Of a stretch of DNA of 64,000 bases, positions 8,120 to 38,069 are shown one piece after another. Both the position numbers and the translations under genes were made by a program. The notes under the pieces were generated by a model. It saw only the letters and a program-made list of their open reading frames with translations. It had not been told where the DNA came from and made no database searches. Each line of letters begins with the position of its first letter. Position 1 is the first letter of the stretch. Source of the DNA: Setoptus koraiensis (Eukaryota; Animalia; Arthropoda); NCBI GenBank assembly GCA_048013815.1, contig CM106586.1, forward strand, positions 2,666,001 to 2,730,000, in the 5' to 3' direction.

Positions 8120-8497
8120 ATGTCAAAAATTGCCAGGAATTTACAAAGACAATTGACTATCACGGCCTCTTGCGTTAAAAGGCTCAAGGAGATTATAAAT
8201 GAAGAAAATCAATTCTTGCGTGTGGATGTGGAAAGTGGCGGATGCCAAGGATTATCCTACAAATTCAAACTAGACAACAAGCTAAATCCAACGGAGGATG
8301 TCGTGTTCGAGAAAGATAAACAAAAAGTTGTTGTAGATTCGGAGAGCTTGTCCTACATACAAGGATCTGTGATAGATTATCAAGAGTCACTAATCAAAAG
8401 TTCCTTCAAGATTGTCGATAATCCCACCGCCAGTAATAATTGTAGCTGCGGATCTTCTTTCTCAATAGATATTAGTGATACAAACAATAATAAATAA
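8120..8497 (+). CDS. ISCA2: Iron-sulfur cluster assembly protein A2-type (HesB/IscA family), single exon, 125 aa
   Basis: LTITASCVKRL, LRVDVESGGCQGLSYKF, IDYQESLIKSSFKIVDNP and CSCGSSFS. Confidence 0.9.
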   Translation: MSKIARNLQRQLTITASCVKRLKEIINEENQFLRVDVESGGCQGLSYKFKLDNKLNPTEDVVFEKDKQKVVVDSESLSYIQGSVIDYQESLIKSSFKIVDNPTASNNCSCGSSFSIDISDTNNNK

Positions 8498-8731
8498 TAG
8501 TTATTAGATTCTGTCCTATAGCACCATCGAACTTGTTAGCGTTTATTTTTCACTTTTTGAATCGGGCGCTATGAAATGCCGTTCTTTTTCAAAAGAGGCG
8601 CTCCTGCACGAGTATCGTGTATCGTCATTCATGCACCATTGTTGCTTTCGATCTATAGCGATAATTCGTCTAGGACCGGTCAGTTTTCGCAAAATTTCCT
8701 AAATAAATTCTGATTAATAATCTCTTGCAAC

Positions 8732-9028
8732 ATGTCAACTTACCAAGGAGCCCAGAGAATTCAAAAGGTGATGGTACAGCCCATCAACCTCATATTTAGG
8801 TATTTACAAAACAAAGCTAGAATACAGGTCTGGCTGTCAGAAAATGTCAGCATGAGGATAGAAGGAGCCATTATAGGATTTGATGAATACATGAACCTAG
8901 TTTTGGAAGATGCCTGTGAATATTATCTAAAAACCAAAACAAGGAAGCCGGTCGGTAGGATACTTTTGAAGGGTGAAAATATTACTTTGATTCAGAGCGC
9001 CACCACAACTGTCAAATCGGAAGAATAA
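8732..9028 (+). CDS. SmE: Small nuclear ribonucleoprotein E, single exon, 98 aa
   Basis: [17 protein letters not shown]...IQVWL...[16 protein letters not shown]...[14 protein letters not shown]. Confidence 0.96.
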
Positions 9029-9163
9029 TAATCATTCTCATTATAATGAATTTGTAAATCAGTTTATTACTTATTTCCTTAGATACATTATTACACTCTC
9101 TTGAGTACATTTGGACACATACACATAATTATTGTTTTTCTCAACATTGATCTCCGCATATCA

Positions 9164-11389
9164 TCATTTCATCTTAACTCGAAAGCGTTCATAATCTTTT
9201 GCTGAGCACATCGGAGTCTCAACCGGCAATATCCTGTTAAACTTATTGTAGTCAATGATTGTTTGCGCATAAGGACCGTAACCCTGTGTGGATATGATAG
9301 GCTCAAATCTGTATCCCCATTTGACTTCACTGGGAAGATAAGATGTTCTAACTTGAATTGACTGACCAGTTGATTCCACAGTACCTTCTATGACAGTTAT
9401 AATTTCAAATTTGAAATTCGCCAGTTGCTCGGAGTTCATTTCATAGAATAAGCTGTCTCTGTCGATTATGTGTACTATGGTTAGTGGCCAAATTAAAAGA
9501 AGATTGTTCCTTGCGTCATCTATTTTAACATCCAGTTGATGGTGATAGAAGGGAATTATTTCACCTTCATTGGTCAGTTTTTGACTGACCAATGAGGCGC
9601 GTATCGTTGCCCCTATGATATGTGATTTGCTCCTTACGTCGCCAACCCTGAATGTTAAACACATTTGATCATCCCTCAGGCACACTGTGGCATATTTACT
9701 AAACATTATAGTCTATATTTATTGATGGATGCAAATGATAAGAGGTGAGCATGAGGAAAGTAAATTAGCCACGTGCTTTCTGCTACATTCAGCCAATTCA
9801 ATTAGTTTGACTCGCTTGCTTACCTGAGACCTCTTAGCGGGTCGAGATAATTTTGCGAATACCATACCAACAATCAGACATTCTACTACAACTCCGAAGA
9901 TTAGTTGTGAACAAAATATTATTATGGCACCTGGGCATTCTACGCTGATTATTCTTGAACCGAAACCAAGTGTTGATTGAGTTTCTATAGAAAATAAAAG
10001 TGCAGCTGAAAAAGAATGTACGTTAACTATGCACGGCTTCCAATTTGGATCATTATCGTGTGACAGATCATCATGAATATATAATACAATATACCATATT
10101 GCTGCAAAGAATATCCATGAGAATACAAAACCCAACGAGGCCGCAAGCAGATTGTATCTCCACTTAATATCTATCATAGTTGTGAATAGATCTCTGAAGT
10201 ATTGTCGCCTATCTATATTGTCTATGTTAAGATTGACGGCACCATTTTTTCCTACCAATCTAGGCAGAGGAGCCGTCTTAGTGCTACCCGCTGTAACTGT
10301 TGTTATAGTTCCACCAACTCCTGCCACTGTAGCCGGTATAGATTGATGAATTTCCGATGTACGCTGATTGTGCGACAGTATATTATTATTGATTGCGTCA
10401 ATATTAGTTAGATTACTGTTGTGGTTGTTGTAAGTAGTAGTGATAGTTGTAGTAGTTGTAGGTGGATAGGTAAAGCCTTCAAAATGCACGATACTATTAG
10501 CTCGTTGTTGTAGATGACTTCCGATGATGTTGTTGCTATCACTGCCAATGACATTAGCATCGTGTTTCACATGTTCAATAGAGGCTTTAAGGTTAGCTAT
10601 ATCGTCGTCATTAGGATCGGCTAAAGTGTCATCTGCATGGTTATTGTTGATGTTGTTGTTGTTATCATTACTGATGTGATTATTGTTATTATGTAAGAGA
10701 TGACGCTGTTCAACATGATTGTCATCATCATCTTCATCATCATTATTATTAATATGTTCGCGGTGATTGGCCAATGATACCATGTTTAAATTATTTTCCT
10801 GTAAATATCTAGCACCATTGGTATCATCCCTAACATTGAGCCTTTGCAGACATTGATTTAGTGTAACATTAATCAATTTTTTTTCCAAACGCATGTTTAT
10901 CTGTTGCTGTGGGTCCTGATAAGAATTATCATCGCAAGCACATTGATCATTTAATTGTGGACTATCTACCGAATAAGACATCAAACTCTTGGATGATTCA
11001 TTGAAATCGAGTTGCTGTTGTTGTTGACTTGAAGGATTAAAGTCATCATTATTTTTTAAAGTTTTAGTATTAGTTTCTCCCAATGTTTGATGGTGTGTAT
11101 TTCCATTATAAAACTGGTCGGTGTTGTTATTGTTGTTGTTATTAACGAGGGTATGACCAAATGATTGAGAGGAGGATGCTGAGGGTGTAAGCGATGATGA
11201 GGATTTCTGTTGTTTGTGTCGATCAAAATTGGATGCTGAAGATGAAGAAGTTGAACAATCTGACTCAAGTGATGATAACAATAATGTTGAAGTAGTTTCA
11301 GTTGAAATCTGTGTGTGATATGTTTGTTGGTGTTGCTGTTCTTGATTAATACAATTTCCCTGTAAGTTTTTATCTTTCTGGGTGGGCAT
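9164..11389 (-). CDS. Inward-rectifier K+ channel; two coding exons (11389..9824, 9712..9164), about 704 aa, with a long low-complexity N-terminus
   Basis: RYFRDLFTTMIDIKWRY, FLFSIETQ-type pore loop (LLFSIETQSTLGFG), VFAKLSRP, WPLTIVHIID and SYLPSEVKWGYRF. A phase-0 GTAAG...ATAG intron at 9823..9713 joins KRSQ to TIMFSKYA. Confidence 0.92.
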
Positions 11390-13865: not shown

Positions 13866-14306
13866 CAACAGATTAGATAAGGGTAGAGATAAAAATAAAA
13901 TCAAGATAATAACGCCAGCCATTCTATTATTAAAAGCTACAACATTCGGGCTGGCTGGCGATTGTTGGCTTGTCTTGCACTTGCTGCGAGCGCAACCAGC
14001 TGTTGTTGTTGCAATTGTTGTTGTTGCTGTTGTTGCCAGTCTGGGCAGGTTGCAGCTAAAGGAAGCGCGACCCAATTCGAGTTCAAGTGCAGCGAAAAAA
14101 GGCTACGCCGACTAGTCAACTTTTGCGCAACAACAACGGCAACAACAGCGGCAACAACAGCAACAGCCAGTTGTAACCTAGATACGGGCCGATGGCTCCT
14201 TTCACTCCTTTCGCACAAATTTATTCATAGCTCTCGCTGAGCCGAGCCGCTCGAGTCGCCGGGCCTGGCCGAGTCCAGTTGCTGCTTCTTTGGGCCAGTG
14301 TGTCAG
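13866..14306. repeat. Direct-orientation diverged copy (A') of non-coding segment 35503..35898
   Basis: Shared blocks such as cagctaaaggaagcgcgacccaatt.gagttcaagtgcagcgaaaaaaggctacg and gttgtaacctagatacgggcc...ctctcgctgagccgagccgct. Confidence 0.9.
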
Positions 14307-15363
14307 AGCCACGACTGACACACTAGCCCAAAGAATGCTCATTTTATATGATACGAGTATTATTATCCGACGCTACATTGCACTCATAGCAAACATGAAG
14401 CGAAGGTTATTGCATTCGTGCGACTCAGTTATCCGTCTCAAATCGAATGCGATACCAACCTGAACAGTGAATTGGGCGACGCCAATCAATAGAGTTGCAC
14501 ACATTGTCACTGGCGTGCAATGTTCCATTATTCAATTTATTGCAATTATCCTCCATATTGTTCCAATCAATACCAAAACTATTACATTTCATATATAACA
14601 TTCAGACGACATTTGTTTCGACGATGCAGCAGAAGCCGTTGATAGGGGCTTCGTTGTTTCACTTGGCGCAACTATTTCACATTGTTTCGACTTGGTTCGA
14701 CAAACTGTATTTCAGTAATATTGCATTATCTGCACAGAACATTCCGTTTGTGGCTGTAGTGACCCCAGAGCTATTATTATCTTCATAGGCACTATGAGGA
14801 TTCAATATTAATTATGTAGATTGACCACCAGTAATTCATTGTCAAGTTGGCGTGGTGTGACCTGAGGGCACTGGCGACACGGACCAATGGGGCGACCATG
14901 AATTGGATGAGCCCGAATCAGATGAAAAAGACCTATAACAGACATAAGCTGATCAGAAGGCCTCTTTTGGCTACGTTTGTCTAGAGAAAGACAGAGAAGA
15001 GAAATTGATTGTTATCAAATAATCTACTGCGAAATCATAATGAGCTTTTTTGAATGAATTTTGCATCCTTCAAAACTTGTAGATGACGCTCTTCTCGCTA
15101 TTGTTTCAATAGCGATCTTTCTTTGATGTGCTTGTTGGCAACACTAAAGAGAAGACCCGAAAATTAAAATATCTCAAAGCAATGACTGAAGGTATCGCTG
15201 GCATTAAATTATGCATGTATTAGATGTACGACCATGAAATACTCGTTCAACGAAATCTCCCTTCTATGAACTGTCCGTCAAGCAAGTATATGAAAATGAA
15301 ACGTTGCTTGATGAATGAATGATTTCGTAGTCAGTCGTAGTTGCTGTTGTTGTTGCTGCTGCT

Positions 15364-16237
15364 GCTCACCTGTGTATTTCAGCCGTACACACTCTCGATC
15401 TAACCATTGATGTTGTCGTTGTTTTTATTATTATGTTACTGGCTAATTTTCAATGCCAATCCGTACACTGACCCCAAATGGAGACACACTCAACAGGTGA
15501 ATACGCTAACTCTCTCTGCTTGTGTGTTGCGCTGGCTTGACACAAACACAAGCCAACTGTTGTTGTTGCTGTCGTTGTTGTTGTCGTTGTTGTGCACCCT
15601 AAAACTGTGTGTCCCTTTTCACTGTAACTGTCTAGCCAGTTACTGTGAAAGAGCCGCAAAAGAGAAGGTAAAACAAGTGAACTTATAACAGTTTTGGGCT
15701 CGATTTGAGTTGCGCCAAGTTGAGCCGAGCAGAGATAAGTTGAGCAGAATGGAATGGAATTGAATTAAACGCAATCGTATTGAGCAGAAATTGGATAGAA
15801 CACAGATATATCCCAAAACTGCTATTGGCCGTCTCTCTGGCAAGCTGTGTCAGTTGCTGCCTTAGTATTGCAGACAAGTTTGACTTTGACCTTAATATTT
15901 GTCGACGAACGCACAAACCAGCAAGCTTGCCACAAATCACAAACACACACACACACGCACACGCACACACCAGAGAGCTTGCCAGAGAGAGATTGTGGCC
16001 GTCATGGCAGAGACACGGACAAAAACAGAATCAGGTGATACAGGTGAATCAGGTATACAAAAACAGAATCAATGTGCGCTGACAATTGCCAATGTAAACT
16101 AACTGTAACTAACTAACATAACAGTTGATACTTTTGTTGCGCTCGGTAGGATATTTATATACAACAATGTCAAATCAATTTATACAATCGTTAAGTAATT
16201 ACTAATTACTAATTAGGTTGACCGCTAATCAGTGAGT
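15364..16237. repeat. Direct-orientation copy (B') of non-coding segment 37269..38069
   Basis: Long near-identical runs, e.g. ttattattatgttactggctaattttcaatgccaatccgt and gcagacaagtttgactttgaccttaatatttgtcgacgaacgcac. Confidence 0.92.
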
Positions 16238-18692: not shown

Positions 18693-19077
18693 CTAACTAG
18701 CAACTGTGCTTATGACCTCGACTCTCACTCAGTCACTCACTCTTACATAACAGCAGCCGCAGCAGCAGCCCATATGAGCCCAGAAATGGCCTGTCCATGC
18801 AGACACAGACACAGACACAGATAGAGGCGCACCAACTCGCTTGTTGTTGTTGTTGTTGTCGGTAGTTGTTGGTTGTTGCTGTTGTTATATACACTCTCGA
18901 GCCCCCAGCGTAGTCGCACGATAGTCGAGGCGCCCATCATCTGGCGTGCCATTGTGTCTGCGATATATAGTTATGTAACAACAACAAACAAAGTGAGAGT
19001 GAGTTTGCCGCAAAAGGTCAAACTCAATAATAGATGAGTCGGTGCTGCATTTGAGTCTGCTGCTATTACATGCCATA

Positions 19078-19485
19078 ACTATATATAGCGCGGCCTCTTG
19101 TATGGCGTTAAGGGGCTCAAACACATGACCAATGAAAACAATCAATTCCTGCCTATGCATGGCCGAAGTGGCCAATGCCAAGGATTATCCTACTAATTCA
19201 AATGAGACATATTTTCTATAAATCTCAACAATGATGATGTAATCGAGAAGGAAAAACAAATATTTTTTGCACATTCAGAGAGCTTGGCCTACATATCAAG
19301 ACGAGATTTGAGATTGCCGATAAGCCTGCTGCCAGTGATAATTGTGGCTGCAGATCTTCTTTCTCTATAGATACAAATAATAATAAATAACAGTTATTAG
19401 ATTCTGTCTTATAGCGGCATCGAACTTGTTAGGGTTAATTTTTCATTTTTTGAATTGGCGCTTTTTCGGTTGAAAAAGGTGCTCC
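19078..19485 (+). pseudogene. Degenerate IscA2 copy including the 3' flank (source about 8156..8605)
   Basis: cggcctcttg, atgccaaggattatcctac.aattcaaa and aataataaataa.agttattagattctgtc.tatagc; frame disrupted. Confidence 0.88.
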
Positions 19486-19520
19486 AAGTTCAATCCATAG
19501 GGTCGAAGTTTGCAAGTTTG

Positions 19521-19815
19521 GTGGCCAAATCAAAACAATATTCTCTCTTGCGTCATCTATTTTGACACATCGAGCTGATGGCGATGAAATTATTATTTTA
19601 TTATTTTACCTTCTTTGGCCAGTTGTTGGCAGACTAAGGAATGGAATTACAATATTATTATGAAAGTTAACCGAGTGTTGATTGAGTTTCAATAGAAACG
19701 GTGCAGCTGAAAAAGAGTGTACGTTAACTGAACAATGTTCCCGATTCTAATCGTTATCGTGTAATATACCGTCATGAATATGCTGTGCTGATGCGAAGAA
19801 TATCCATGAGAATAC
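19521..19815 (-). pseudogene. Second Kir fragment (sources about 9484..9597 and 9915..10125, joined by a deletion)
   Basis: gtggccaaat...cttgcgtcatctatttt, agtgttgattgagtttc.atagaaa, gtgcagctgaaaaaga.tgtacgttaact and gaatatccatgagaatac. Confidence 0.8.
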
Positions 19816-20100
19816 ATGTTGACTCACCAAGGAGCCCAGAGAACTCAAAAAGTGATGCTGCCAACAACCTCACATTTAGGTATTCATGCAACGAAGCCAG
19901 AATACTTGGCGTGAGAAAATGTTAGCACGAAGACAGAAGGACTCATTATAGGATTCGTTGAATACATGAACCTAGTTTTGGAAGATGCCCGTGAATAGTA
20001 TCTAAACACCTAGAAAATCAGTCGATATCAAATAATAATTATTGTCATTGTAATGAATTTATAAATCTGTTTATTTATTACATATTTCGATTAGATATTC
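19816..20100 (+). pseudogene. Degenerate SmE copy with 3' flank (source about 8732..9090, internal deletion)
   Basis: accaaggagcccagagaa.tcaaaa.gtgatg and cattataggatt...tgaatacatgaacctagttttggaagatgcc.gtgaata; indels and a stop. Confidence 0.88.
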
Positions 20101-20112
20101 TTTAGATATTAG

Positions 20113-20358
20113 CTTGAATATTGACTGTCCAGTTGATTCTTCAGTGACCTATCACAGTTATAGTTTCAAATTTAAAATTGGCCAGTTGCTACTGGGAGTC
20201 CATTTCACATACGTGTGTGTCGATTATGTGTGTGCTATAGTTGTTGGCCAAATTAAAAGAAGATTTATGTTTATTACGTCATCTATTGTCACATCCAGCT
20301 GACAATGATAGAGGGGAATTATTTCACCTTGAGTGGTCAGTATTTGGCAGACTAATGA
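20113..20358 (-). pseudogene. Third Kir fragment (exon 2, source about 9351..9597)
   Basis: ttgactg.ccagttgatt, tttcaaattt.aaatt.gccagttgct, ggccaaattaaaagaagatt and ggaattatttcacctt. Confidence 0.85.
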
Positions 20359-20391
20359 TGCATTAGTAATGATGCATCGTTGTGCCGATGA

Positions 20392-21894
20392 TCAGTTCAT
20401 TATTGACAGATATAATTTCCTTGGCGAGGCCAACAGCAGCGGCGATGTGAGCGCCGATTTGAGGATGCCCGTAGTTGGTGTTGTAGTTGTTGAGCCTGGC
20501 GAGCTGGAGGTGTCGTTGAGATGATTAGGTGGTGACTGCAATGCCGCAATTAGTGCCGAGGCTTGGGGCGTTTTTGAATCTATTGGCGGCGATATACATG
20601 TGAGACCATTGAGTTGTTGTCGCTGTTGTTGTTGCATGTGATGATGATGAATTGGCGATATGGCACCAGTGAGAGTGTTCAATAGATGCTGATGAGGATG
20701 AGATGCTGACGATGGCGAGGATGCTGCTGAGGCGGTGGTTGTAGTGGTGGTAGTAGTGGTGGTTGTGGTGCTAATGGAGCTGGTTGTGTGTTGTTGTTGC
20801 TGTTGGTTGTTGGCAGCGTGCAGACTAGAATTAGTGCTACCACGGGTTGTTGTGGTGGTGGTAGTTGTGTCTGTGGAGCTTGTTGAGGAACTAGAAGAGC
20901 TGGAGCTAGAGGAAGGCGACGACGACGACGACGAGCTTGCTCTCGATTGATTAGACTTTTTGTGTTTCTTGTATTTGACTTTGTACATGTTGTAAACGGC
21001 GCCCGAGTTTCGTCCGCCGGGCATTCTGTCCTCTCTGACTGCGGCCAGCACCATGCCTTGGCGCAAACATTTCTGGAAGCGGCACGATTGACAGCGATTC
21101 CTCTGTTGTTTTGTTATGACACATTTGTCTTGGCTGACACAAGTGTAAACGCGCTTGTTTTGCACCGTTCTCTTGAAGAAGCCCTTGCAACCCTCGCAAG
21201 TTATAATGCCATAATGCAATCCGGTTGCCTTGTCCTCGCATATCATGCAAATCATCACCTGATTTCCGTTTTGTTGCTGGCTGGCCTGTTGCTGCTGATT
21301 GGCGGGGTCCATGAGTGCGGGATCCTGATGATTGTGATTGAATTGTTGTTGACTAGCGGATGTTGTTGTGGCGGTTGCGTGCGACGATGACGGCGCGCCC
21401 CCATTGGAGGTGGCCGTCGTTGTTATGGATGGCGGCGGTGTTGACACCATCAGTTTGTTGGCAACGGTTGCACAACCGTTTGTTGTTGTTGTTGTTGTTT
21501 TTGATTTGTTGATGTTGTTGTTGTTGTTGTCGTGCTGATGATGTTGATCGTGTTGTTGGTCTACGCACATGGGAACAACTGAATTATTGGTGGCGGCAGC
21601 TACCGACGATGGCGACAATGATAACGATGATGCCGACGACGATGATGAGCTAGATGAGAGCGTCGACGATAGCGATGACACCGACGACGTTGACGACAAC
21701 GACGACGTTCGCCTGCTGCCGGACGACAAATCTAGACACTGATTCATCCATGAGGGGGGCGATTGCGACAAATTGTAGCCGTTGTTTGTGTTGCCGTAAT
21801 TGAGCTGATTGTGGCCCAATTCGGCGACACTCAATGAGGCCAGTGTGGCGGTCATTGAGGATTTTCTCTTTTTTAGAGGCAGCCGTTGTTCCAT
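20392..21894 (-). CDS. Hr4: Miniature HR4 paralog, 500 aa from ATG, intact ORF, DBD only
   Basis: cacaccATGG start, [11 protein letters not shown], a C4 zinc-finger DBD identical to that of the main copy, and the same terminal [20 protein letters not shown]-stop. Whether it is expressed is unknown. Confidence 0.75.
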
Positions 21895-22651
21895 GGTGTG
21901 ATGTGACGACAAAATGCAATCGGATGCAATTGTGATAACCTTGAGATTGGCCAGATTTTGCTGTTTGAATAAAATATTTTTAATGGAAGCTATTGAAATA
22001 ATATCATTACTAACTGAGCACCGTAGTGTGAGTGTGTGTGTGTTGTGGCGTCGATGTTTACCCGAGCTAGCCAAAATTAGCACTGATGCTGCTGAGCGTT
22101 CAGTCGCAGCAGACAACAACTGCTGCTAGTTGCTAGTCGCAGAATGAGATCACCAGAAGTTGCACAACTTATAACTGTTAACGTTATTGTTACGTAACGC
22201 ATACCCTTAACTTTCAATGATCATGCTGCGAGGGGGAAGGAATGGGGGCGGGGTGGAGAGAGCGAGAGAGAGAGAGAGAGAGAGAGTTCAATAGTTGTTT
22301 TTAGTTCACCACACCATGGCACAAATAGCCCCTGGTGTCAAGGAACTCAACTACAGCTATGGCATGACCTTTTGAGACTGTATGAGGTGCTTGGCATTGA
22401 CACTAACGCTCACACAGACGCACGCACCAACTAAAGAAAGGCTTATAGTGAGACAAACGGGCACGCACACAGTCGAGCGCTCAATGTTACGTAATCAGGC
22501 CGCGCGCACACACACACACACACTGCAAAAAAGCCTCACTGTGACTCATCTTGTGCGTCTGTCACGTTGAGTTGAGTCGCTACTTGTTGTGAGACTCACG
22601 CGGACAACAACAGCAGCAGCGACAACAACGACGGCGACAACAACAGCAACG

Positions 22652-22696
<45 letters not shown>

Positions 22697-22775
22697 TCTC
22701 AATGGTCTCACATGTACTCACCAGCGGCTTACCAAGTGAAATGAGTGAAAGCAAACAGCCAGCCGATGCCTCAGT
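21895..22775 (-). promoter_or_regulatory. Diverged copy of the HR4 proximal upstream region (source about 30607..31800)
   Basis: Shared islands aatgagatcaccagaagttgc.caactt.taactgttaac, cccttaactttcaatgatcat, gagagagttcaatagttgtttttagttcacc and cacacagtcgagcgctcaatgttacgtaa. Confidence 0.8.
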
Positions 22776-23950
22776 GGTGAGAATGTGAAGTAGCAATGAC
22801 CTTTGAGCTAGTTTTGTTGATCTAGCCACAGTGAGGAGGCTCTGGCGCGATGCACAACAGATATCACTGACACTTGCTCCAGAATCATGCTATGTGACAA
22901 ATGTCATTGAATCCATTGGCCGATCATTGATACATTGCCATGATTTTTTGCTACTCGAGCCTCACCGATCAAACTTTCATCACATCGTCTCTAATGGCGC
23001 CATGTCGCTATGATGGCGCAATTGTTCATTTAATTGTAACGTTATTTGTATGCCACCAATACTGACAACTTGTTAATATAATGACAATGCAATTGCCATG
23101 ACTCAATCGATTGTGTGCCCACCTAAATATTTATTGAGTTGACCAACAAACAATTTTAAGCAAGCACCAGATTACGTTACAGTTTTATACTGCAAACACC
23201 CTGTCATAAACTCGATAAACGCAATAAATCTCTACTCTGCTCTCTGCAACTCCTATCTCACATTCTCTTCCGTCGTCATGCAACCACAATATTCTTATTC
23301 TTTACTCTATCATCACGCCTGACAATTCGCTCACATTGTAATTTCCAAAGTCTCTATTTCAAGGTCCGATTCCGGCCGAAAGGTGGCTACCAAATGTGTC
23401 ACAGTTGAAAACATTCATAGCACTGACTATTGATGTTATCAATATTCTGTTTGAAACCTGATATAAGACCTCATATAAGCGGTTAATCAGGCGAGATATA
23501 TTATGCTATCAGCGTCACAATATGGTTCATCTGAAATGCAAGAGAATGGAGATTAACGAATGTTGTCAGCTAACGAGAGATCCATTTGTGCTCAGTTAGG
23601 TTGCAATCAAAACGAAAAAGGAAGCATTTTCGTTACGAGAATGTAGAATGGACGAGAAGACACTCAAGCTAGGTCCACAAAATGAACAGCCTTGCATCAA
23701 AAATGAAATAATGTTAACTTTCCATCGAAAGATTGGCTACAACGCCAACAATCAATGGGCACAAATTTAGCATATCCGGCCAATGGCAGGCCGACCAGGT
23801 ATCTCACTAAAGCGCCAAAATCTTTGTCCGCCAAAGCTGTCTTCGCTAAGCAATTGAAAGCTCCTCTATGCCGACTGGAAAGGACAGGAAGCTAACGAAT
23901 ACTACGGTCTTGCTCTAAATTATTTAGCCCAAAGGCTACAAGATAGGATG

Positions 23951-24679
23951 TTTCAACCTTACATTAAAAGGTCCAAGATAAAACAAATACAACTCGAGCA
24001 AGATTCTGCTAGATCTTTGCATGATGTAAATACATTTCATGATGGCCAAAGAAAAGACTTTAGTCTCGTGGATTTCAATAGGTCTGGCGTCGCCCTTATG
24101 GAGATTGTATTTGAGCCAGATTTAAAAGACCAGCATGAAGCAACTTCTGTATTGACTGAACTCATAACTATCTTGAAATCAATAGGAACTTGCAGCTGTC
24201 AGCTAGAAGAGGGATCGTTGCGTGTAGATGCCAATATATCAATAGATTCTATTGACGGGCAAAGGTTTGATGGAACTGGTCGTGTTGAGCTTAAGAATCT
24301 CAATTCTTTGCGATCTCTAAATCGAGGTATCGAGCATGAGATCTTTAGGCAAGGGCAACTACTTCTGTCGGGCGAAAGGGTGGAACGTGAAACTCGATCA
24401 TTTGATACAAAAACTGGTAAATCTGTATTGTTAAGAAAAAAAGAAGAATCAATAGACTACCGATATTTTCCAGAGCCAAGCTTACCCCCGATAAATACAA
24501 CTGAGTATGAATCATTAAACTTAGAACAAACACTCAGTAAACGACCCTTTGAAGAAGCCATGGAATTAGCTGCTCAGTATGGACTTTCTATGGACTTGGT
24601 CAAGTATATTACCTCGGTTGATAGTATGAAGGATTTCCTCTTAGAGGCTCACAGATTCAGTAGATGCAAAAGTTTGGAC
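23951..24679 (+). pseudogene. Inverted, near-identical 729-bp internal fragment of GatB (source 2549..3277)
   Basis: The translation matches GatB from FQPYIKRS to RCKSLD. I found one difference by eye (24019, F to L). No native start or stop. Confidence 0.92.
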
Positions 24680-24849
24680 ACCAAATGTCCCATTCGTTGA
24701 GTGAAAGACCAATATCGTTCTCTATCAGTTGTGAACTAATCAAGTAGCAGTTCTTCGGCAATGGATAGTAAGTAAGAAAGTACGAATAACCTTTGTTCAA
24801 AAGGTATGCAGAAACATGATATATGAAAAAATTGATGGAGAAACCCTGA

Positions 24850-24961
24850 AACTGTCCTGTTCGATCAGTCTAAACAGGATATTGACAATCTAGCACGCGG
24901 CAAATTGCATTGTCGGGGTGCACCTCATCACCTGAAGAATCAACAAGTACTAACTGCACTA
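24850..24961 (+). pseudogene. Inverted diverged scribble fragment 1 (source 5873..5765)
   Basis: tcgatcag.ctaaacagga.attgacaatc...cacgcgg.aaattgcat...cacctcatcacctgaagaatcaacaagt. Confidence 0.8.
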
Positions 24962-25481
24962 TCAAGGAACCCTACTTAGGTGTTGGACTCCTATTGGGCT
25001 ATGCTTAGCCTATCTGTTCTCGGCTAGTCGAGCTGAGCACGAATACGCTAGTCAAATACCTGTTTTTTTGTCGTTTTTCTGCAATATTCATAGTAAAAAT
25101 TTCATTGTTTCTGACACTCTCACACCTTATTAAGACAATCTGAACAGTTCGGCCCCCCAGTGTAATGACCTTTTGCACAGTTATTACCGGCACCGAATTG
25201 TCCGGATTTTATCGAGTCCATGGTCCATCTGACCATGGACTCGATGTCCACCCGCTTCCAACTACCTGCTGGAGGTGGGAGTAGTTAAAAACTTACTTTT
25301 TTTACTTAAAGGGTGTTCCATTCCAAACGCACATTAGAACTGTTATTTAGTTTTCCTGATGTGTTTGATAGATTTTTTGGGTGTTGTAGCGACTAGGTCC
25401 CCACTCAGAATTTGATGAAACTTCACAAACGGGCTCCGTAGGGGCCCCATATCACAAATTGAGTAGGTATTTGTGGTGTTG
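24962..25481. mobile_element. 520-bp insertion splitting the scribble pseudo-fragment, flanked by a duplicated TA
   Basis: The source reads gcacTAagtaaag; the copy reads gcacTA-[520 bp]-TAagtaaag. No convincing terminal inverted repeats. Internal 15-bp-stem hairpin. Confidence 0.4.
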
Positions 25482-25817
25482 TAAGTAAAGAAGACAAGCG
25501 TAAAGTTGAGTTACTTGCAAAATATAAGAAAAGAATTATCTACATCGACAGTCGACTTACACCAAAAGGTCCCACTGAAGCTGCCGGTGTTAAAGTGAAG
25601 GATAAGATCTTGGCGGTGAATGATAAAGAATTTTATGAGGGCATAGATCATGGGACCGCTGTGGAGATTTTCAAAAAGGTCAAATCAAATTGTAAAGACG
25701 AAGCAGATGAGGACGAGTCGCAAGATGACGCATTTGTACAGCCGACAGACTATTTAACTAATAGTACAACTGTTAAAAAACAGAATTTATCGGAAGACAC
25801 TTTGCCTAACACGAATA
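25482..25817 (+). pseudogene. Inverted scribble fragment 2 (PDZ1 region, source 5766..5317, two internal deletions)
   Basis: KDKILAVNDKEFYEGIDH.TAVEIFKKVKSNC and DEADEDESQDDAFVQPTD match scribble. Confidence 0.88.
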
Positions 25818-26607
25818 TTTCTGTGAGATGTAGGAATCGGCCAAAAAATGGCGAATTGCGTTCAGAGAAACCATTGAACAATGTCGTGACATCATCTCGC
25901 CGAATATACAATCCAACACAAGCTAGAATATGCTTCGAAGTGAAAACGGGCGCCCCACGTAGGTATTGTGTGAGAGCCAAAGTCGGATAGTAGACGGATG
26001 AGTTGGGCATTCGCAACAATGGGGCGATTGTCGATGAAGTATGATATACTTGTATCATGTATGAAATCAAATAAAATGAAAAGTGCACGTTGATGAAACG
26101 AGCCAGAGCCGCGAGAAAATTTGTTACGCGTCTAGAGATAAATGATAATTATTACTCAAGGAGTTTTAAACTCACAAGAGCAATCTCTCTATTTATAGTT
26201 AGCTTATTTACAAATTATCAATAGCATTGCACTAAAATGTGATGATAAGTGTGTATGTTTATAACAATGTTTTCGTTGTTTGTTTGCAACCATCCGCTGA
26301 TTGACCACTTATATCAATATCAAATTGAATAAATTAATAGCGGCTCAAATTGTTGGCTAGTATGGTGGAGCGGCAGTTCATATACATAGCATACATTTGA
26401 TATTTGTAATTGTTGTTGAGTTGTTGCCAATAATAGTTGACAACTTGTAATGTAATGTATAATATATGATATTGCATTGTTTGCATCTATTCTATCTACG
26501 CTTGCCATCAGTTTGGTCGGTCGATCGAGTTTGATTGAATTCATTTGATTTTATTATTAGTAAACTTCATTTTAAATCAAGTGTCAACAATCAGTGCAAG
26601 CGAGCAA

Positions 26608-29600
26608 TCAGTTCATGATTGTTACGTACAACTTTCTTGGCGAGGCCAATTGCAGCGGCGACGTGAGCGCCGATTTAAGGATGGTGCTGCCCGTGGTGGA
26701 TGCCGTTGTTGTTGGCGTTGTAGTTGTAGTGGATGTGGCCGCCGTGGTTCCGTTTGTCAAATTAGCCGGACTTGCATTTGTGGTCAACGGGGGCGTTGTT
26801 GAGCCCGGCGAGCTGGAGGCCGTGGAAGCGGAAGTGCTATTGCCGGCACTGTTGCTGTCATTGTGATCGTTGTTGTCTTGGCCGTTTAGTCTGGGCGACA
26901 TTGGTTTAGGTGAGCCATTGGAACTGGGTGGACCTGTTGTCGATGTGCTGTTCAGTGCAGTTAATGAGTTTGAAATGTTCATTAGCGACGGCTTAACATC
27001 TTGATTCGACGATGACAATGGCGATGTTATCGAGGAAGAGGAACAAGTGGATGATATCGACGACATGGATGAAGTAGACAACTTTTTGGTTGAGTTGCGC
27101 TGTTGCGGCTGTTGAGTATCATTGAGATAATGGTTGTTGTTTGTTGGTGGCGATTGCAATGACGCAATTAATGCTGAGGATGGCGGTGATTTTGAATTTA
27201 TTGAGCTACTGTTAGACTTTGGTGACATCAACAATGACGACGACGACGACGACGACGACGAACCGGCCGCGTTAGACGATACAATTGGGGGCGATATAGA
27301 CGTGAGACCATTGAGTTGTTGTTGTCGCTGTTGTTGTTGCATGTGATGATGATGGATTGGCGATATGGCACCAGTGAGAGTGTTCAATAGATGCTGGTGA
27401 GGATGAGATGCTGACGATGGCGAGGATGCTGCTGAGGCGGTGGTTGTAGTGGTGGTAGTAGTGGTGGTTGTGGTGCTAGACGGGCAGCTGGTTGTGTGTT
27501 GTTGTTGTTGCTGTTGGTTGACCAGCGCGTTGTCGTTGGCGGTCTGCGGACTAGAATTAGCACTTGTATCACTTACTGTCATTTGCTCCAATTTGATATT
27601 GCTGCCTTGGCCATTGGCGTTGTTGTTGTTATGTTGTTGTTGTGACATAATTTGACCATTGGGCGGCGACGCAATTGGCGACAGCACACTCGTGGGCGAC
27701 GACATCGGGTACGACTGGCCAGTCTGGTTGTTGTTGTTGTGGTTGTTGTTCAACTGATTGCTGGCACTGCTGCTGGTAGTGGTGGTAGTTGTGTCTATGG
27801 ATGAGGTCGATTGTGTCGGCGACGAATTCACCGATTTCATCGAGGCGCCAGAACTGGAATTGCAACTGGAACTAGATGAGCTAGAGCTAGACGACGAGCT
27901 AGATGACGAGCTCGACGACGACGAGCTTGCTCTCGATTGATTAGACTTTTTGTGTTTCTTGTATTTGACTTTGTACATGTTGTAAACGGCGCCCGAGTTT
28001 CGTCCGCCGGGCATTCTGTCCTCTCTGACTGCGGCCAGCACCATGCCTTGGCGCAAACATTTCTGGAAGCGGCACGATTGACAGCGATTCCTCTGTTGTT
28101 TTGTTATGACACATTTGTCTTGGCTGACACAAGTGTAAACGCGCTTGTTTTGCACCGTTCTCTTGAAGAAGCCCTTGCAACCCTCGCAAGTTATAATGCC
28201 ATAATGCAATCCGGTTGCCTTGTCCTCGCATATCATGCAAATCATCACCTGATTTCCGTTTTGTTGCTGGCTGGCCTGTTGCTGCTGATTGGCGGGGTCC
28301 ATGAGTGCGGGATCCTGATGATTGTGATTGAATTGTTGTTGACTAGCGGATGTTGTTGTGGCGGTTGCGTGCGACGACGACGGCGCGCCCCCATTGGAGG
28401 TGGCCGTCGTTGTTATGGATGGCGGCGGTGTTGACACCATCAGTTTGTTGACGACGGTTGCACAACCGTTTGTTGTTGCTGTTGTTGTTGTTGTTCCGTT
28501 GTTGTTGCTGTTGTTGACATGAGAAAGTGTCGTAACAGGCGTAGACGGTGCAGAGGTCGCACAGACCGGTGAGGAGGAACTCAATTCCATTAGTGTGGGC
28601 AATTGTTGTTGTTGTCCATTTGTTTTATTTTGTTGCTGTTGTTGTTGACTTAGATTGTGTGTTAAGTGATGCTGTAAATGCTGATGATGTTGGTGGTGGT
28701 TGTTGTTGTGGTTGTGCTGATGATGCTGATGGTGCTGCTGTAATTGGTGTTGCAATTGTTGTTGCAGATGGTGGTGCGCATGATCGTGCTGCTGATTGGG
28801 TGCGGGATCTACGCACATTGGAACAACAAGATTGTTGTTGTTGTTTTCGTTGTTTTGATCTATCGATGATCTGTTGCTGTTGCTAGTGAGATGCAACTGC
28901 AATTGACTGTGATGTTGCTGCTGATGCTGATGATGATGATGATTGCTCGTCAAATGGTGATGCAACGCCGATTGACCAAATGTTGTTGTCTGTCCCGTAT
29001 TTATGGATTGCTGCTGCTGCTGTTGCTGTTGGTGCAATGGAGATATTGAATTTCTCCTCTGTTGTTGCTGCTGTTGTTGTTGTTGGTGGTGGTGCAATTG
29101 ACTTTGGTGGTGGCCCAAATGCAAATGATGCAAATTATGATGATTATTGTTGCTGTTGTTAGATGTCAATTGCGACGTGAGATGCGGATTGTTGGCGCTG
29201 GTGGCGCTACTGTTGTTGCTGTTGGTATTGAGTAATTGAACAGGTTGCAACAGTTGCGATACCAATTGTGAATTGTTTGATCCGGTTGTCGATGTTGTGG
29301 TCGTGGTCGATGAGTGACTTTGGTGGTTCTGATATTGGTTGTTGCTGTTGTTTGTCAATGATGAAGATTTCAATGGCGACGATGTGGCAGCACACAAATT
29401 ATGCAAATGATGTTGCTGGTGCGACGATGATACTGAACTGAGTGTGACTGGAGTCGGGGGCGACTGCTGGCCCCCAATTAGATGCAGCGATTGCAACTGT
29501 GACAACTGTTGTTGTTGTTGTTGTTGTTGTTGCTGCTGTTGCTGTTGCTGCTGTGATTGCTGCATTCCCGTTGACATAATCAACGATGAGGCCGATGAAG

Positions 29601-30606
29601 ACAATGTCGACGACGATGTTGCAATCGACGATACTTGCACCTGATTCACAACGGCGGCCAGGGCAACCGCGGCAGCCGATGAGGGCGACAGTGATAATGA
29701 TGATGTCGACGACGACGACGACGACGAGCTAGATGAGGCCGACGAAAGCGACGACACAGAGGCAGACAATGACGAGGAGCCTGTGGATCCAACGGAGGAG
29801 GTCGACGACAGCGACGACGTTCGCTTGCTGCCAGACGACAAGTCGAGACATTGATTCATCCAAGCGGGGGGCGATTGTGACAGAGTGTGGCCGTTGTTTG
29901 TGTTGTGGTGATGATTGTGGTGCGGATGTTGCTGTTGGTGGTGGTGATGATGGTGGTTGTGGTGTTGGTGTTGAGAGGCTGCGGCGGCCGCTGCGGCACT
30001 TGCAACCGCAGCTGCTGTCACTGCATCGGCAACCAACTGACCGTGATGGTCAATCGATGCGACGTGTTGTTGCTGTTGTTGTTGTGCATTTAAATGTGTT
30101 GCGTTAATTAGATTGTGTTGCTGCTGTTGCTGCGAAGCGGCCACGTTGGATAAATTTATTAAATTGTTCAATTGTTCATTGGTGGCGGCGGCGGCGGCCG
30201 CGGCTTGATCCACCTGAAATTTGCACTGGCCAGCAGCGGCCTGATTGTTGTTTAGATGATGTTGTTGTTGTTGTGCTAATTGTTGTTGGCGCATTTGCTG
30301 CGTCTGGTGCAGAGCTTGCTGATAGTGATGATAGGCGAGCGCGTTCGGAGGTGAGGGCGACATGCTCTGTCTGTTGCCGTTTTGCTGCTGTTGTTGCATA
30401 ACTTTCTTGAGAGTTTCCATAAGTGTGACAGAGGTGCCAGAGGGGCCAGAATGGTTCACCGGTGACTTGTTAGCCCTGGCGCTGTCCAGTTGGTGGCCCA
30501 GCGCAACCACCGATGAGGCCCCCAGTGAGGCCAGTGTGGCCGTCATAATGGAAGCGGGGTTTGTTGTTGAGGATTTTCTCTTCTTTAGTGGCAGTCGCTT
30601 TTCCAT
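26608..30606 (-). CDS. Hr4: Nuclear receptor HR4 (NR6A/GCNF family), single ORF of 1332 aa from ATG; Q/H/N/S/T-rich, DBD present, no LBD in this ORF
   Basis: [31 protein letters not shown]...[28 protein letters not shown] is the HR4 DBD plus C-terminal extension. caccATGG at 30606; the ORF track start at 30648 is a TTG. Confidence 0.9.
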
Positions 30607-31474
30607 GGTGATGCGATGTGATTGGCGATGTGATTGGCGATAATGCAAATGATTTATATTATATAATCGATGATTATATAATGATATTGATTGATGCTAA
30701 TACGATTATATTATTAGATAATATACTGATGCGACTCTGTGTTTGCCCGAGCTTGCCAAAATACACACTGACTGGCTGTTGGCTTGCTGGCTAACAGACA
30801 ACTGCTAACACTGCCAATGAGATCACCAGAAGTTGCGCAACTTCTAACTGTTAACTGTGTGTATTGTTGTTTCTATACTTGTCTCTCTCTATACTTGTAA
30901 TCACACCCTTAACTTTCAATGATCATACTGTGTGTGTGTTACATAAGCGTATAAGCCATGTTATGCTACTTACCAGTGTAGCTGTTAGCCAAGTGAGAGG
31001 GAGAGAGTTCAATAGTTGTTTTTAGTTCACCGCACCATGGCACAAATAGCGGCCCCCTGGTGCAAAGAACCTGTACTAGTGAAAGGCATAACCTTTTGAG
31101 ACTCGCCGAGATGTATGGCATTGACACTAACGCACACACAAACAAACGCACCAACTGACGAAAGGCTTACGACGAGACAAACGAGCACGCACACAGTCGA
31201 GCGCTCAATGTTACGTAACCTGGCTAACACACATTGCGGTTAAGCCTCGCAGTGACTCATCTTGTGCGTGTGTCACGCTGAGTCGCTCACTTTTGCTTGT
31301 GTTATGTAATGTCTGTTGTGTATTGCGTGTATGTCTGACAGTGTTGTCTGTGGTGATACTACAGACACTGCAAAGCACAATTGAGCCAACAACAGATAGG
31401 GGCACAGAGGCGAGCAAATGTAAAAATAGATGCAAGCGTGTAAATACAAGAAACTTCTCCAATGTTGTTACCAA

Positions 31475-35502: not shown

Positions 35503-35898
35503 CAACAGATTACAACAAGATAAGCGCAGAGATAAAAATAAGACAAAAATAATAATGCCAGCCAGTCTATTATTAAAAGCAACAGCTGACTGGCTGCATG
35601 TCTTGCACTTGCCCCCACCGTTGCCGTTGTTGTTGCCGTTGTTGTTGCCGTTGTTGTTGGTGCTGCTGTTGCCGCTCTGGCCAGCTAAAGGAAGCGCGAC
35701 CCAATTTGAGTTCAAGTGCAGCGAAAAAAGGCTACGCTGACTAGTCGGCTATTGCGCAACAACGGCAACAACAACAGCCTGTTGTAACCTAGATACGGGC
35801 CAATGGCTCCTTTCACTCCTTTCGCGCAATTTATTCATAGCTCTCGCTGAGCCGAGCCGCTGGGCCGGCCAAGTCGCTTCTTTGGGCCAGTGTGTCAG
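35503..35898. repeat. Non-coding segment A (source of A')
   Basis: See 13866..14306. Confidence 0.85.
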
Positions 35899-36403
35899 TC
35901 GGCACAGTGGTTGCTGTTGTTGCTGTGCTCGCCCAGTTCACCAGACAACCACATGAACTTGCCAAGTAACCGTTGCCACTTGCGAGGCGCCAACAGAGCC
36001 ACCTGACGAGCAACAATTCGGACAAATTGGTCAAATTTGTTGCTCAATGAGACTGTGCCCAACAAGCGCAATCGCTTGTCGCTGCAATCACGGCAACTGT
36101 TGCCAGTCAACACCCAAAATGGACAACGACAACAACAACAACAACGACGACTCTTGTAAGCAGCAACTTAATTATGCGATTACACCTGTATCGCATGCAT
36201 GCATGCAGTTGGCCGATATTAATTAGCACATAACTGGCCGTTGCTGGCCGATAAACGTTGCTGGCCACAGGCTGCTGCTGACGGGCACCGCTGGCGGCCT
36301 CGACGCGAAGCTTGCACAGCACAAGATTGGCTCATTTCGGGCGGCTCGACTCACCGTTCGAAGCCACCACAGACTCTGGAGAGAGAGAGAGAGTCGACCT
36401 TAA

Positions 36404-36412
36404 TCAAGGTCA
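36404..36412 (+). promoter_or_regulatory. TCAAGGTCA extended half-site (FTZ-F1/NR5A and GCNF/NR6A type)
   Basis: Exact motif match; function is inferred. Confidence 0.35.
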
Positions 36413-36438
36413 ACTCTCTCTACACCGCTCTCCACCTT

Positions 36439-36497
36439 GCAGAGTCTACACTGCAGAGTCTACACTGTAGAGTCTACACTGTACAGTCTACAGTGTA
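36439..36497. repeat. 14-bp tandem repeat x4 (g(c/t)agagtctacact)
   Basis: Direct reading. Confidence 0.8.
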
Positions 36498-36751
36498 TCA
36501 GCCACCGAGCCAACAATATCAACACATGATACAAGGGTAAAAATAACGGTGAACAATAACAATACAATAATAGATTGCAGTGCCAATCAGTTGCTCATTC
36601 ATAAATGTCAAGCCATCTCTGGATTGTCTCGATTGTCTGGATTGCCAACGGGGGCACGTACGTTTTTCATTTTCGTGCGCTCGCCCAACGAATGGTTCAT
36701 TTGGTCGAGTGAGCGTGCCATGGTAGCTCATAATTTCATCCGTCCAGCGTG

Positions 36752-36798
36752 CGATATTATCGAGTCGATATCATCGAGTCGATATCATCGGATCGATA
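36752..36798. repeat. 14-bp tandem repeat x3 (cgatatcatcgagt)
   Basis: Direct reading. Confidence 0.75.
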
Positions 36799-37268
36799 GG
36801 TGCCCTGTCAGTTGTAATGTGGAGACTGTGCTCCCATTATGGGAGTCCCTTATCGTCTGCAACCGGCATTTGGAGCATTCGCAGTGTCGGTGCTGCCGAG
36901 TGTCGATCGTCAGACGGCAGCCACCAGATCCGGAAAATGACGAATGGGAGCTCGAGCTCAACGAGCGCCTCATGCAAGCCAATCGCTAATCTGCGAGTTT
37001 CAGCAAGGGAGCCACTTGAAGCCTTTCGCTGACGACAGCGGCCAAAAAAACACGGCAAACCAGCGGTGTCGAAAAATGAGAAATGGTCTAGCGGCAAATT
37101 GTCTTGGGAGAAGCGCTTGGGAGAGGCGAATGGGAGAGGCGAATGGGAGAAGAAATGACAGAGATGACAACATTTTATTGTGAGCAGCAACAATATAGCG
37201 GCAAGTGCTGGCAAGAATGGGGAGGCTCGTCGCAATAGTTGCAAATGCACACACTTGTTGCCGTTGTC

Positions 37269-38069
37269 GCTCACCTGCTTGTGTGTCGATCCAGCCATTG
37301 ATGTTGTTGTTGTTTTTATTATTATGTTACTGGCTAATTTTCAATGCCAATCCGTGCACTGACCCCAAATGGAGACACACTCAACAGGTGAATACGCTAA
37401 CTCTCTCTCTCTGCTTGTGTGTTGCGCTGGCTTGACACAGACACAAGCCAACTGTTGTTGTTGCTGTCGTTGTTGTTGTCGTTGTTGTGCACCCTAAAAC
37501 TGTGTGTCCCTTTTCACTGTAACTGTCTAGCCAGTTACTGTGAAAGAGCCGCAAAAGAGAAGGTAAAACAAGTGAACTTATAACAGTTTTGGGCTCGAAT
37601 TGAGTTGCGCCAAGTTGAGCCGAGCCGAGCCGAGCAGAGATAAGTTGAGCAGAATGGAATGGAATTGAATTAAACGCAATCGCATTGAGCAGAAATTGGA
37701 TAGAACACAGATATATCCCAAAACCGCTATTGGCCGTCTCTCTGGCAAGCTGTGTCAGTTGCTGCCTTAGTATTGCAGACAAGTTTGACTTTGACCTTAA
37801 TATTTGTCGACGAACGCACAAACCAGCAAGCTTGCCACAAATCACAAACACACACAAACACACACACACACGCACACACCAGAGAGCTTGCCAGAGAGAG
37901 ATTGTGGCCGTCATGGCAGAGACACGGACAAAAACAGAATCAGTTGGCTGCTAGCAATTGTTAATGTAAACTAACTGTTAGCCCATAACAGTTTATACTT
38001 TTGTTGCGCTCTTTAGGTTATTTATACAACAATGTGTCTATCGCAATCAGTGGCCGCTAATCAGTGAGT
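37269..38069. repeat. Non-coding segment B (source of B'); possibly an HR4 promoter or non-coding 5' exon
   Basis: Its left edge is a minus-strand CAG|GTGAGC that is also kept in B'. Confidence 0.8.

What the first reader, a model, noticed from the sequence alone, without database searches (positions are those of the whole stretch)
20392..21894. Intact miniature HR4 paralog (500 aa versus 1332 aa) with signs of purifying selection
Seen: neighbouring copies are frame-broken, but this one stays open across several large indels, totalling about 830 codons, that fall in low-complexity tracts. It keeps all motif islands: [24 protein letters not shown], the DBD, and ILKSALTSP. In the last ten codons (PRKLY.. 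IMN) there are five synonymous third-position changes and two conservative replacements, with the same stop. The Kozak context and upstream islands are kept. Inference: a functional second HR4 with the same DNA specificity, possibly acting as a competitor or stage-specific repressor in the moulting cascade.
Basis: partly seen in the sequence, partly recalled or inferred. Interest (0 to 1): 0.85.

Follow-up and report, generated by a model that had tools for sequence, protein, structure and literature searches.

The report
Second ligand-domain-less HR4 gene in mite
A compact mite genome carries a real second copy of the moulting-cascade transcription factor HR4; selection has kept it intact and its DNA-binding core is kept identical to the first copy, but whether it is expressed or acts as a competitor is not shown.

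Summary
A 500-codon ORF on the minus strand (20392-21894) is a shortened duplicate of the 1332-codon HR4 ORF at 26608-30606. It has the same start context, motif islands, DNA-binding domain and stop.

It is real DNA. Error-free contigs from four runs in four studies (one, X4, with SNPs of its own) span its junctions, and its depth matches its flanks.

Outside two near-identical tracts, dN/dS is 0.15 (95% CI 0.09-0.24) at dS 0.48, and all net indels are in frame. The adjacent Kir and Scribble fragments are full of stops. A 465-bp stretch of exact identity covers the DNA-binding domain, which shows gene conversion.

Neither copy has a ligand-binding domain anywhere in the 64 kb. Similar HR4 genes on three other compact-genome contigs are 217, 449 and 589 aa; the two longer ones end with the same short tail. 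A published eriophyoid genome also reports HR4 without this domain. So the shared stop is genuine, 500 aa is a normal size for this group, and the 1332-aa copy is the outlier.

Expression is only hinted at, by one patchy, RNA-like run. The competitor or repressor idea is untested.

Verdict: a new member of a known kind, of moderate interest. The scan also noted this stretch as s1-356697.

The parts
20392..21894 (-). Short HR4 paralog: complete intronless ORF of 500 aa plus TGA
   Evidence: ORF listing; Pfam zf-C4 only; HR4 is the best-matching family
20956..21249 (-). DNA-binding domain plus C-terminal extension (aa 216-313), identical in protein to the long copy
20923..21387 (.). 465 bp exactly identical to 27913-28377. 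Identity continues to 21460 with one mismatch at 21388. This is a gene-conversion tract.
   Evidence: The shared contig 20923-21460 has about twice the depth of the copy-specific contigs.
20621..20777 (.). Second near-identical tract: 157 bp with 5 mismatches to 27326-27482
21895..22600 (-). Upstream region with conserved islands shared with 30607-31310 (likely 5'UTR and promoter); CACCATGG start context
20237..20391 (-). Sequence after the stop, mostly derived from the Kir fragment, with AATAAA at 20270-20275. A contig of run X7 ends at 20237. Possible 3'UTR.
19105..20361 (-). Kir channel pseudogene fragment, 75-83% identical to 8172-9598, with stops and frameshifts. It starts about 30 nt after the short HR4 stop.
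26608..30606 (-). Long HR4 copy: 1332 aa, also without a ligand-binding domain, with about 830 extra residues rich in Q, H, S, N, T and A
23940..24679 (+). Inverted GatB fragment, 99.3% identical to 2549-3288; truncated but open
24850..25829 (+). Inverted Scribble pseudogene fragments, 87-88% identical, with stops and deletions

Best explanation
The ORF at 20392-21894 is a genuine second, intronless HR4 (NR6A-type nuclear receptor) gene. Like the long copy and like HR4 in related compact-genome mites, it has a DNA-binding domain but no ligand-binding domain.

It arose by a local duplication that carried about 700 bp of upstream sequence and ended 3 nt past the stop codon, where it now abuts a Kir pseudogene fragment.

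Since then the two copies have diverged to dS of about 0.5. They differ by about 830 codons of low-complexity linker. Purifying selection has kept the short reading frame and its conserved islands. Gene conversion has repeatedly made the DNA-binding core identical.

Shown: the DNA is real, the ORF is intact, the coding sequence is constrained, conversion has occurred, and there is no ligand-binding domain.

Inferred: the protein is made, and it binds the same response element as the long copy. It would differ only in its disordered Q/H/S-rich regions, and therefore possibly in activation strength or partner recruitment.
For: Family: HR4 proteins are the best matches, with E about 1e-60.

Real DNA:
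- Contigs with 0 mismatches span the Kir/HR4 junction in X1, X2, X4 and X7. Short-specific parts are also covered, 21549-22247 in X1 and X2 and 21549-22032 in X4.
- Depth in X1 is 117-140 for short-specific contigs, 125-129 for the flanks and 294 for the shared tract.
- X4 has SNPs of its own at 23693 and 23778, so it is an independent sample.

Selection:
- 219 codons outside the conversion tracts give dS 0.478, dN 0.071 and omega 0.149. The bootstrap 95% CI is 0.09-0.24, and no replicate reaches 0.5.
- Using only non-repetitive codons gives omega 0.153 (Fisher p = 5e-11).
- The upper bound for the short lineage alone is 0.31.
- All net indels are in frame.

Internal control: the adjacent Kir fragment, at similar divergence, has stops and frameshifts, and so does the Scribble fragment.

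The stop is real: LBD-less orthologues P0143 (449 aa) and P0181 (589 aa) share the LPLKKRKSS start and end 12-13 residues after ILK[ST]AL.SPL. Unrelated genes follow them, and no ligand-binding domain lies within about 5 kb. Greenhalgh et al. 2020 (PMC7738191) report no predicted ligand-binding domain for HR4 in Aculops lycopersici, where 84% of genes are intronless.

Expression hint: run X7 covers only genic pieces. These include the short-specific stretches 20237-20477 and 20697-20867 with 0 mismatches.
Against: - No run of known RNA type shows the transcript. X7's type is unknown, and it gives no cover over the short-specific 5' third (21400-22200).
- The gene sits in a 12-kb mosaic of dead gene fragments.
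- Roughly 45% of the ORF lies in conversion tracts, which would look intact even in a pseudogene. The few differences there, at the tract edges, are 7 non-synonymous to 2 synonymous, which is near the neutral ratio.
- Many indels fall in trinucleotide-type repeats, where slippage favours multiples of three without any selection.
- Its native 3'UTR was lost at the duplication breakpoint.
- dN/dS measures past constraint, so a recent death cannot be excluded.
Confidence: 0.6

Rival explanations
1. It is a non-functional or recently dead duplicate. It is a by-product of the local rearrangements that also left the Kir, GatB and Scribble fragments. Its core looks intact because the working long copy keeps converting it. 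The rest is open by chance and because slippage in triplet repeats keeps the frame.
For: It lies in a mosaic of pseudogene fragments. Conversion tracts cover the DNA-binding domain. Differences at the tract edges are near the neutral ratio. Expression is unproven. The native 3'UTR is lost.
Against: A neutral short lineage predicts a pairwise omega of at least 0.5. The observed value is 0.15, with an upper CI of 0.24, also in non-repetitive codons. The neighbouring Kir fragment of similar age has decayed. The start context, the upstream islands and the clade-conserved C-terminal tail are all kept.
Confidence: 0.27
2. The short ORF is an alternative first coding exon of a single HR4 transcription unit. 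It would lie downstream of the long exon and be spliced to shared downstream exons.
For: Both ORFs are on the same strand, about 4.7 kb apart, and have similar upstream regions.
Against: No downstream HR4 exon or ligand-binding domain is found in the window, by tblastn or by a 96-sequence profile. The short copy has no good splice donor near its end. The orthologues end at the same tail and stop, followed by unrelated genes. A published eriophyoid genome is 84% intronless (PMC7738191).
Confidence: 0.05
3. It is an assembly artefact: an alternative haplotype or a contaminant species placed in tandem.
For: The genome may come from a pool of wild individuals. This is an inference from PMC11920263, and the identity of the genome is not verified. 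The depth ratios seen within the mosaic alone cannot exclude a half-depth haplotig.
Against: The same junctions appear with 0 mismatches in contigs from four runs of different samples and studies, one of them with SNPs of its own. Divergence of dS 0.48 plus about 2.5 kb of indels is far beyond allelic levels. The flanks are not collinear with those of the long copy.
Confidence: 0.03

Closest known systems
HR4 / NR6A (arthropod hormone receptor 4; vertebrate GCNF)
   Same: The DNA-binding domain and C-terminal extension match HR4 best, with E about 1e-60 and up to 94% identity to other HR4 proteins. An N-terminal LKLKRRK-like motif and the ILKSALT motif are shared with other HR4 proteins.
   Different: There is no ligand-binding domain. 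Canonical HR4 proteins end in a ligand-binding domain with a KMFYVPFLL-type C-terminus.
HR4 without a predicted ligand-binding domain in eriophyoid mites (Aculops lycopersici, Greenhalgh et al. 2020, PMC7738191), and the unnamed orthologues P0143, P0181 and P0201
   Same: DBD-only architecture in single-ORF genes on compact-genome contigs. They share the LPLKKRKSS start, the CLDL island, RCQSCR in the second zinc finger, and (except P0201) a stop 12-13 residues after ILK[ST]AL.SPL.
   Different: Here two copies sit about 4.7 kb apart and exchange sequence by gene conversion. The contigs of the other species show one copy each. I did not find a second copy reported in the paper's main text; its NR tables were not among the files I could search.
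DBD-only nuclear receptors of the NR0A group (Drosophila knirps, knirps-like, eagle); from my own knowledge, not tested here
   Same: A zinc-finger DNA-binding domain with no ligand-binding domain, acting as a ligand-independent transcription factor.
   Different: A different subfamily. This DBD is NR6A-type, and the loss of the ligand-binding domain would be independent and specific to this mite lineage.
Tandem paralogs homogenised by gene conversion (the classical pattern seen in globin or opsin gene pairs); from my own knowledge
   Same: An exactly identical core of 465 bp is flanked by sequence with dS of about 0.5.
   Different: Nothing unusual. Here the tract is centred on the DNA-binding domain.

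Membership tests
HR4 / NR6A nuclear receptor | C4 double zinc-finger DNA-binding domain whose best matches are HR4/GCNF | tested here: met
   Pfam PF00105 with E = 3.6e-30. The top hits are HR4 across arthropods.
HR4 / NR6A nuclear receptor | C-terminal ligand-binding domain (PF00104) | tested here: not met
   No PF00104 match in either ORF. tblastn with HR4 C-termini finds nothing. A profile of 96 HR4 ligand-binding domains run against the six-frame window gives a best E of 0.17.
HR4 / NR6A nuclear receptor | Family-specific linear motifs: the N-terminal LKLKRRK-type motif and the ILKSALT motif after the DBD | tested here: met
   LPLKKRK at residues 6-11 and ILKSALTSP at 477-485. The same motifs occur in other HR4 proteins.
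LBD-less HR4 of compact-genome (eriophyoid-type) mites | Single ORF starting near LPLKKRKSS and ending at a stop 12-13 residues after ILK[ST]AL.SPL, with nothing HR4-like downstream | tested here: met
   Alignment A2 with P0143 and P0181. Gene neighbourhoods. No ligand-binding domain in L002 or L003.
Functional protein-coding paralog | Intact frame and dN/dS well below 1 outside the conversion tracts | tested here: met
   Omega is 0.149, CI 0.09-0.24; the short-lineage bound is 0.31. Indels are in frame.
Functional protein-coding paralog | Paralog-specific transcript | tested here: inconclusive
   Run X7 has short-specific contigs and a patchy, genic-only cover. Its type is unknown and the 5' third is not covered. 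No matching protein or contig is on record.
Functional protein-coding paralog | The protein is made and binds DNA | not testable with these tools
   This needs proteomics or a binding assay.
Gene conversion between paralogs | A tract of identity far exceeding what the flanking synonymous divergence predicts | tested here: met
   465 bp have 0 differences, where several tens of synonymous differences would be expected at pS of about 0.35.

The most novel reading that the evidence does not exclude
After HR4 lost its ligand-binding domain in this mite lineage, its activity may have come to be set by the ratio of two paralogs. Gene conversion locks both onto the same response element. The 1332-aa form would carry long Q/H-rich activation or condensate-forming regions, and the 500-aa form would lack them and act as a competitor. 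That would be a dosage-based substitute for ligand control in the moulting timer.
Probability: 0.1. Interest if true: 0.7.

Novelty: new member of a known kind. Interest (0 to 1): 0.36.

Why it matters
Published eriophyoid mite genomes are dominated by gene and domain loss. A retained, selectively maintained duplicate of a core moulting-cascade transcription factor in such a compact mite genome goes against that trend.

The pair is a clean natural example of two things. One is gene conversion holding a DNA-binding domain identical. The other is disordered linker regions being free to expand or shrink nearly threefold.

The work also corrects the reading of the gene. HR4 here ends at a real stop without a ligand-binding domain, as published for one eriophyoid. 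This matters for anyone modelling ecdysone signalling or looking for targets in this group of mites. It is not a new kind of system.

Tried and rejected
- **Ligand-binding domain search.** tblastn with full-length proteins and with C-terminal pieces, plus an HMM of 96 HR4 ligand-binding domains, gave only noise in the window and in L001-L003. A weak, recurring tblastn hit at 46780-46923 lies in an unrelated region upstream of both copies and does not look like a ligand-binding domain.
- **Exact-protein look-ups.** The 500-aa, 575-aa and 1332-aa products are not on record.
- **Search with the last 106 residues of the short copy**, to find spliced or transcript fragments: blank.
- **Whole-library phmmer search.** It found no relative closer than P0143, P0181 and P0201.
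- **Bacterial-type promoter and terminator scan.** Run, but irrelevant for a eukaryote.
- **Upstream regions against those of the outgroup loci.** Only simple-repeat matches.
- **Long-only segments against outgroup proteins.** No significant similarity, so I cannot say whether the short copy lost them or the long copy gained them.
- **Supplementary tables of PMC7738191.** Searched for the NR list; not among the files held.
- **Joint 20595/22717 on opposite strands.** It has a 40-nt side in a triplet-repeat region, so I take it as repeat-induced rather than structural.
- **Identity of the genome.** The T2T eriophyoid genome of PMC11879100 does not fit: its chromosomes are about 17 Mb, but this piece spans more than 21 Mb. 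The two-chromosome, 47-Mb Setoptus koraiensis assembly fits better. This stays an inference, because organism names are coded.

Full report
**What is there**

On the minus strand, 20392-21894 is an open frame of 500 codons from its first ATG. A second minus-strand frame of 1332 codons lies at 26608-30606. Both match only the nuclear-receptor zinc-finger model PF00105 (E about 1e-30) and have no PF00104 ligand-binding domain. Database searches place the DNA-binding domain firmly in HR4/NR6A, with hundreds of arthropod HR4 proteins at E about 1e-55 to 1e-64.

A codon-aware alignment shows that almost every codon of the short frame has a partner in the long one. The difference is about 2.5 kb of extra sequence in the long copy. 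Every net indel between in-frame blocks is a multiple of three.

- The motif islands are present in both copies.
- The last ten codons show five synonymous changes and two replacements before the same TGA.
- The CACCATGG start context and the conserved upstream islands are shared.

**Setting**

The short copy sits in a mosaic of duplicated pieces:
- A Kir-channel fragment at 19105-20361, 75-83% identical to 8172-9598, starts about 30 nt after the short stop.
- An inverted GatB fragment lies at 23940-24679 (99.3% identical to its source).
- Inverted Scribble fragments lie at 24850-25829 (87-88% identical).

The Kir and Scribble fragments carry stops, frameshifts and internal deletions. The GatB fragment is truncated but open. 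Similarity between the two HR4 copies runs from about 700 bp upstream of the ATG to 3 nt past the stop, and no further.

**Is it real DNA?**

Six runs hold 74-96% of the sampled words of 19100-25900. I laid the contigs of four runs on 19000-24999.
- Contigs with no mismatch span the Kir/HR4 junction: X1 19960-20642, X2 19969-20642, X4 20240-20642, X7 20237-20477.
- Short-specific sequence is covered too, 21549-22247 in X1 and X2 and 21549-22032 in X4.
- In X1, short-specific contigs have depth 117-140, the flanks 125-129, and the contig shared by both copies (20923-21460) 294. That is what two full-depth copies would give.
- X4 differs from the window at 23693 and 23778, so it is an independent sample.

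The divergence between the copies and their non-collinear flanks rule out an allelic haplotype. I could not compare depth with a region outside the mosaic, so a small residual doubt remains.

**Selection and conversion**

Identity along the gene is very uneven. A stretch of 465 bp (20923-21387 = 27913-28377) is exactly identical. With one mismatch it reaches 21460. It covers the DNA-binding domain at 21249-20956. A second 157-bp block has five differences. The remaining blocks are 67-100% identical, mostly 80-90%.

In the 219 in-frame codons outside the two long blocks, dS is 0.478, dN is 0.071 and omega is 0.149 (bootstrap 95% CI 0.09-0.24). With only non-repetitive codons (111), omega is 0.153 and Fisher's p is 5e-11.

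If the short copy had drifted neutrally while the long one stayed constrained, pairwise omega should be at least 0.5. No bootstrap replicate reached that. Assigning every replacement to the short lineage still gives omega of at most 0.31. The ratio is not affected by the timing of past conversions.

The exact identity of the core, against pS of about 0.35 in the flanks, can only be gene conversion. The intact DNA-binding domain is therefore not in itself evidence for function. The few differences at the tract edges are 7 non-synonymous to 2 synonymous, close to the neutral ratio.

**Why the stop is real and 'miniature' misleads**

No ligand-binding domain is detectable anywhere in the 64 kb, either by tblastn or by a profile built from 96 HR4 ligand-binding domains (best E 0.17).

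The searches found three unnamed relatives with the same signature: an LPLKKRKSS start, a CLDL island, and RCQSCR in the second zinc finger.
- P0143: 449 aa.
- P0181: 589 aa.
- P0201: 217 aa.

P0143 and P0181 end 12-13 residues after ILK[ST]AL.SPL, with a tail resembling the one here. On their contigs they are single ORFs among other single-ORF genes. Unrelated genes follow them, and no ligand-binding domain lies within about 5 kb.

Greenhalgh et al. 2020 (PMC7738191) report that in the eriophyoid Aculops lycopersici, HR4, DSF, HR38, E75, HR51 and SVP have no predicted ligand-binding domain, and that 84% of genes are intronless. Earlier notes on this genome list DSF-like, HR38 and HR4 genes without that domain. 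The window itself has single-ORF GatB and Scribble genes with tiny spacers.

I therefore infer an eriophyoid-type genome. A two-chromosome, 47-Mb assembly (PMC11920263) fits the piece sizes better than the 34-Mb one (PMC11879100). Organism names are coded, so this is not verified.

In this setting the shared TGA is the true end of the protein, 500 aa is an ordinary length, and the 1332-aa copy is the outlier. Its extra segments are 58-82% made of four residue types and have no detectable match in the outgroups. I cannot tell whether the long copy expanded or the short copy contracted.

**Expression**

No run of known RNA type was offered. Run X7 (depth 2-9) covers only these parts:
- 20237-20477 and 20685-20867, of which the contigs at 20237-20477 and 20697-20867 are short-specific with 0 mismatches;
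- 20923-20997 and 21108-21387, sequence that the two copies share; the first piece belongs to a contig that runs on unlike the short copy;
- pieces of GatB, at least one of them from the true gene.

It has nothing at 19000-20199 or 21400-23799. One of its loose ends matches the long copy at 27749-27778. Such genic-only cover is what RNA would give and is very unlikely for DNA at that depth, but this is an inference.

The contig end at 20237 lies about 33 nt after an AATAAA at 20270-20275 inside Kir-derived sequence. That would suit a new polyadenylation site. The short-specific 5' third is not covered, and contigs carry no strand. I rate expression as probable but unproven.

**Mechanism**

Shown:
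- There are two LBD-less HR4 genes with identical DNA-binding domains and C-terminal extensions.
- The upstream region carries shared islands, and the short coding sequence is constrained.

Inferred:
- Both proteins bind the same element without a ligand.
- They differ in disordered Q/H/S/N-rich regions, which could change activation strength or partner binding.

Redundancy or modest subfunctionalisation is at least as likely. The conserved upstream islands do not favour sharply different regulation.

**Verdict**

This is a lineage-specific paralog of an already described LBD-less HR4 type: a new member of a known kind, of moderate interest. The same stretch was also noted by the scan as s1-356697 (gene conversion) and within s1-356665 (mosaic). 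My tests agree with both.

Noticed in passing
L004:219-872 (Logan SRR29668618), protein P0201: A complete 217-aa HR4-type ORF in another sample. It has the LPLKKRKSS start, the CLDL island and the DBD, then stops about 20 residues after the DBD extension, with no ILKSALT motif. It is an even smaller LBD-less HR4.
   Followed up: partly
L001:6884-8773 (-) and L001:10001-12163 (+) (ENA ERZ26858887), proteins P0132 and P0124: Two HR4-type ORFs sit head to head on one 14.9-kb contig of a different organism (they start MSLYQDLKLKKRK). So local HR4 duplication is not unique to this genome.
   Followed up: no
window 22485-22492 and 22185-22192 (minus strand); long-copy counterpart near 31200: A TTACGTAA palindrome lies inside a perfectly conserved upstream island of both copies, and a second one occurs only in the short copy. 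From memory it resembles a PAR-bZIP / D-box site.
   Followed up: no
window 13875-16170 versus 35518-38035: Sequence from far upstream of the long HR4 copy is duplicated (79-96% identical) between the Kir gene and the mosaic. It is part of the same complex rearrangement.
   Followed up: no
window 24307: Contigs of X1, X2 and X4 all read C where the window has T, inside the GatB fragment. This is either a consensus error in the assembly or the contig path of the true GatB gene.
   Followed up: no
window 9707-9718 region (Kir gene, minus strand): The Kir gene is split into two ORFs (9719-11389 and 9164-9706). The pattern suggests a short intron after the AKRSQ codons, so short introns do exist in this otherwise single-ORF neighbourhood.
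   Followed up: no
window 26608-30606: The long HR4 copy carries about 830 residues of Q/H/S/N/T/A-rich sequence with no match in the 217-589-aa orthologues. This is unusual bloat for a streamlined genome.
   Followed up: partly
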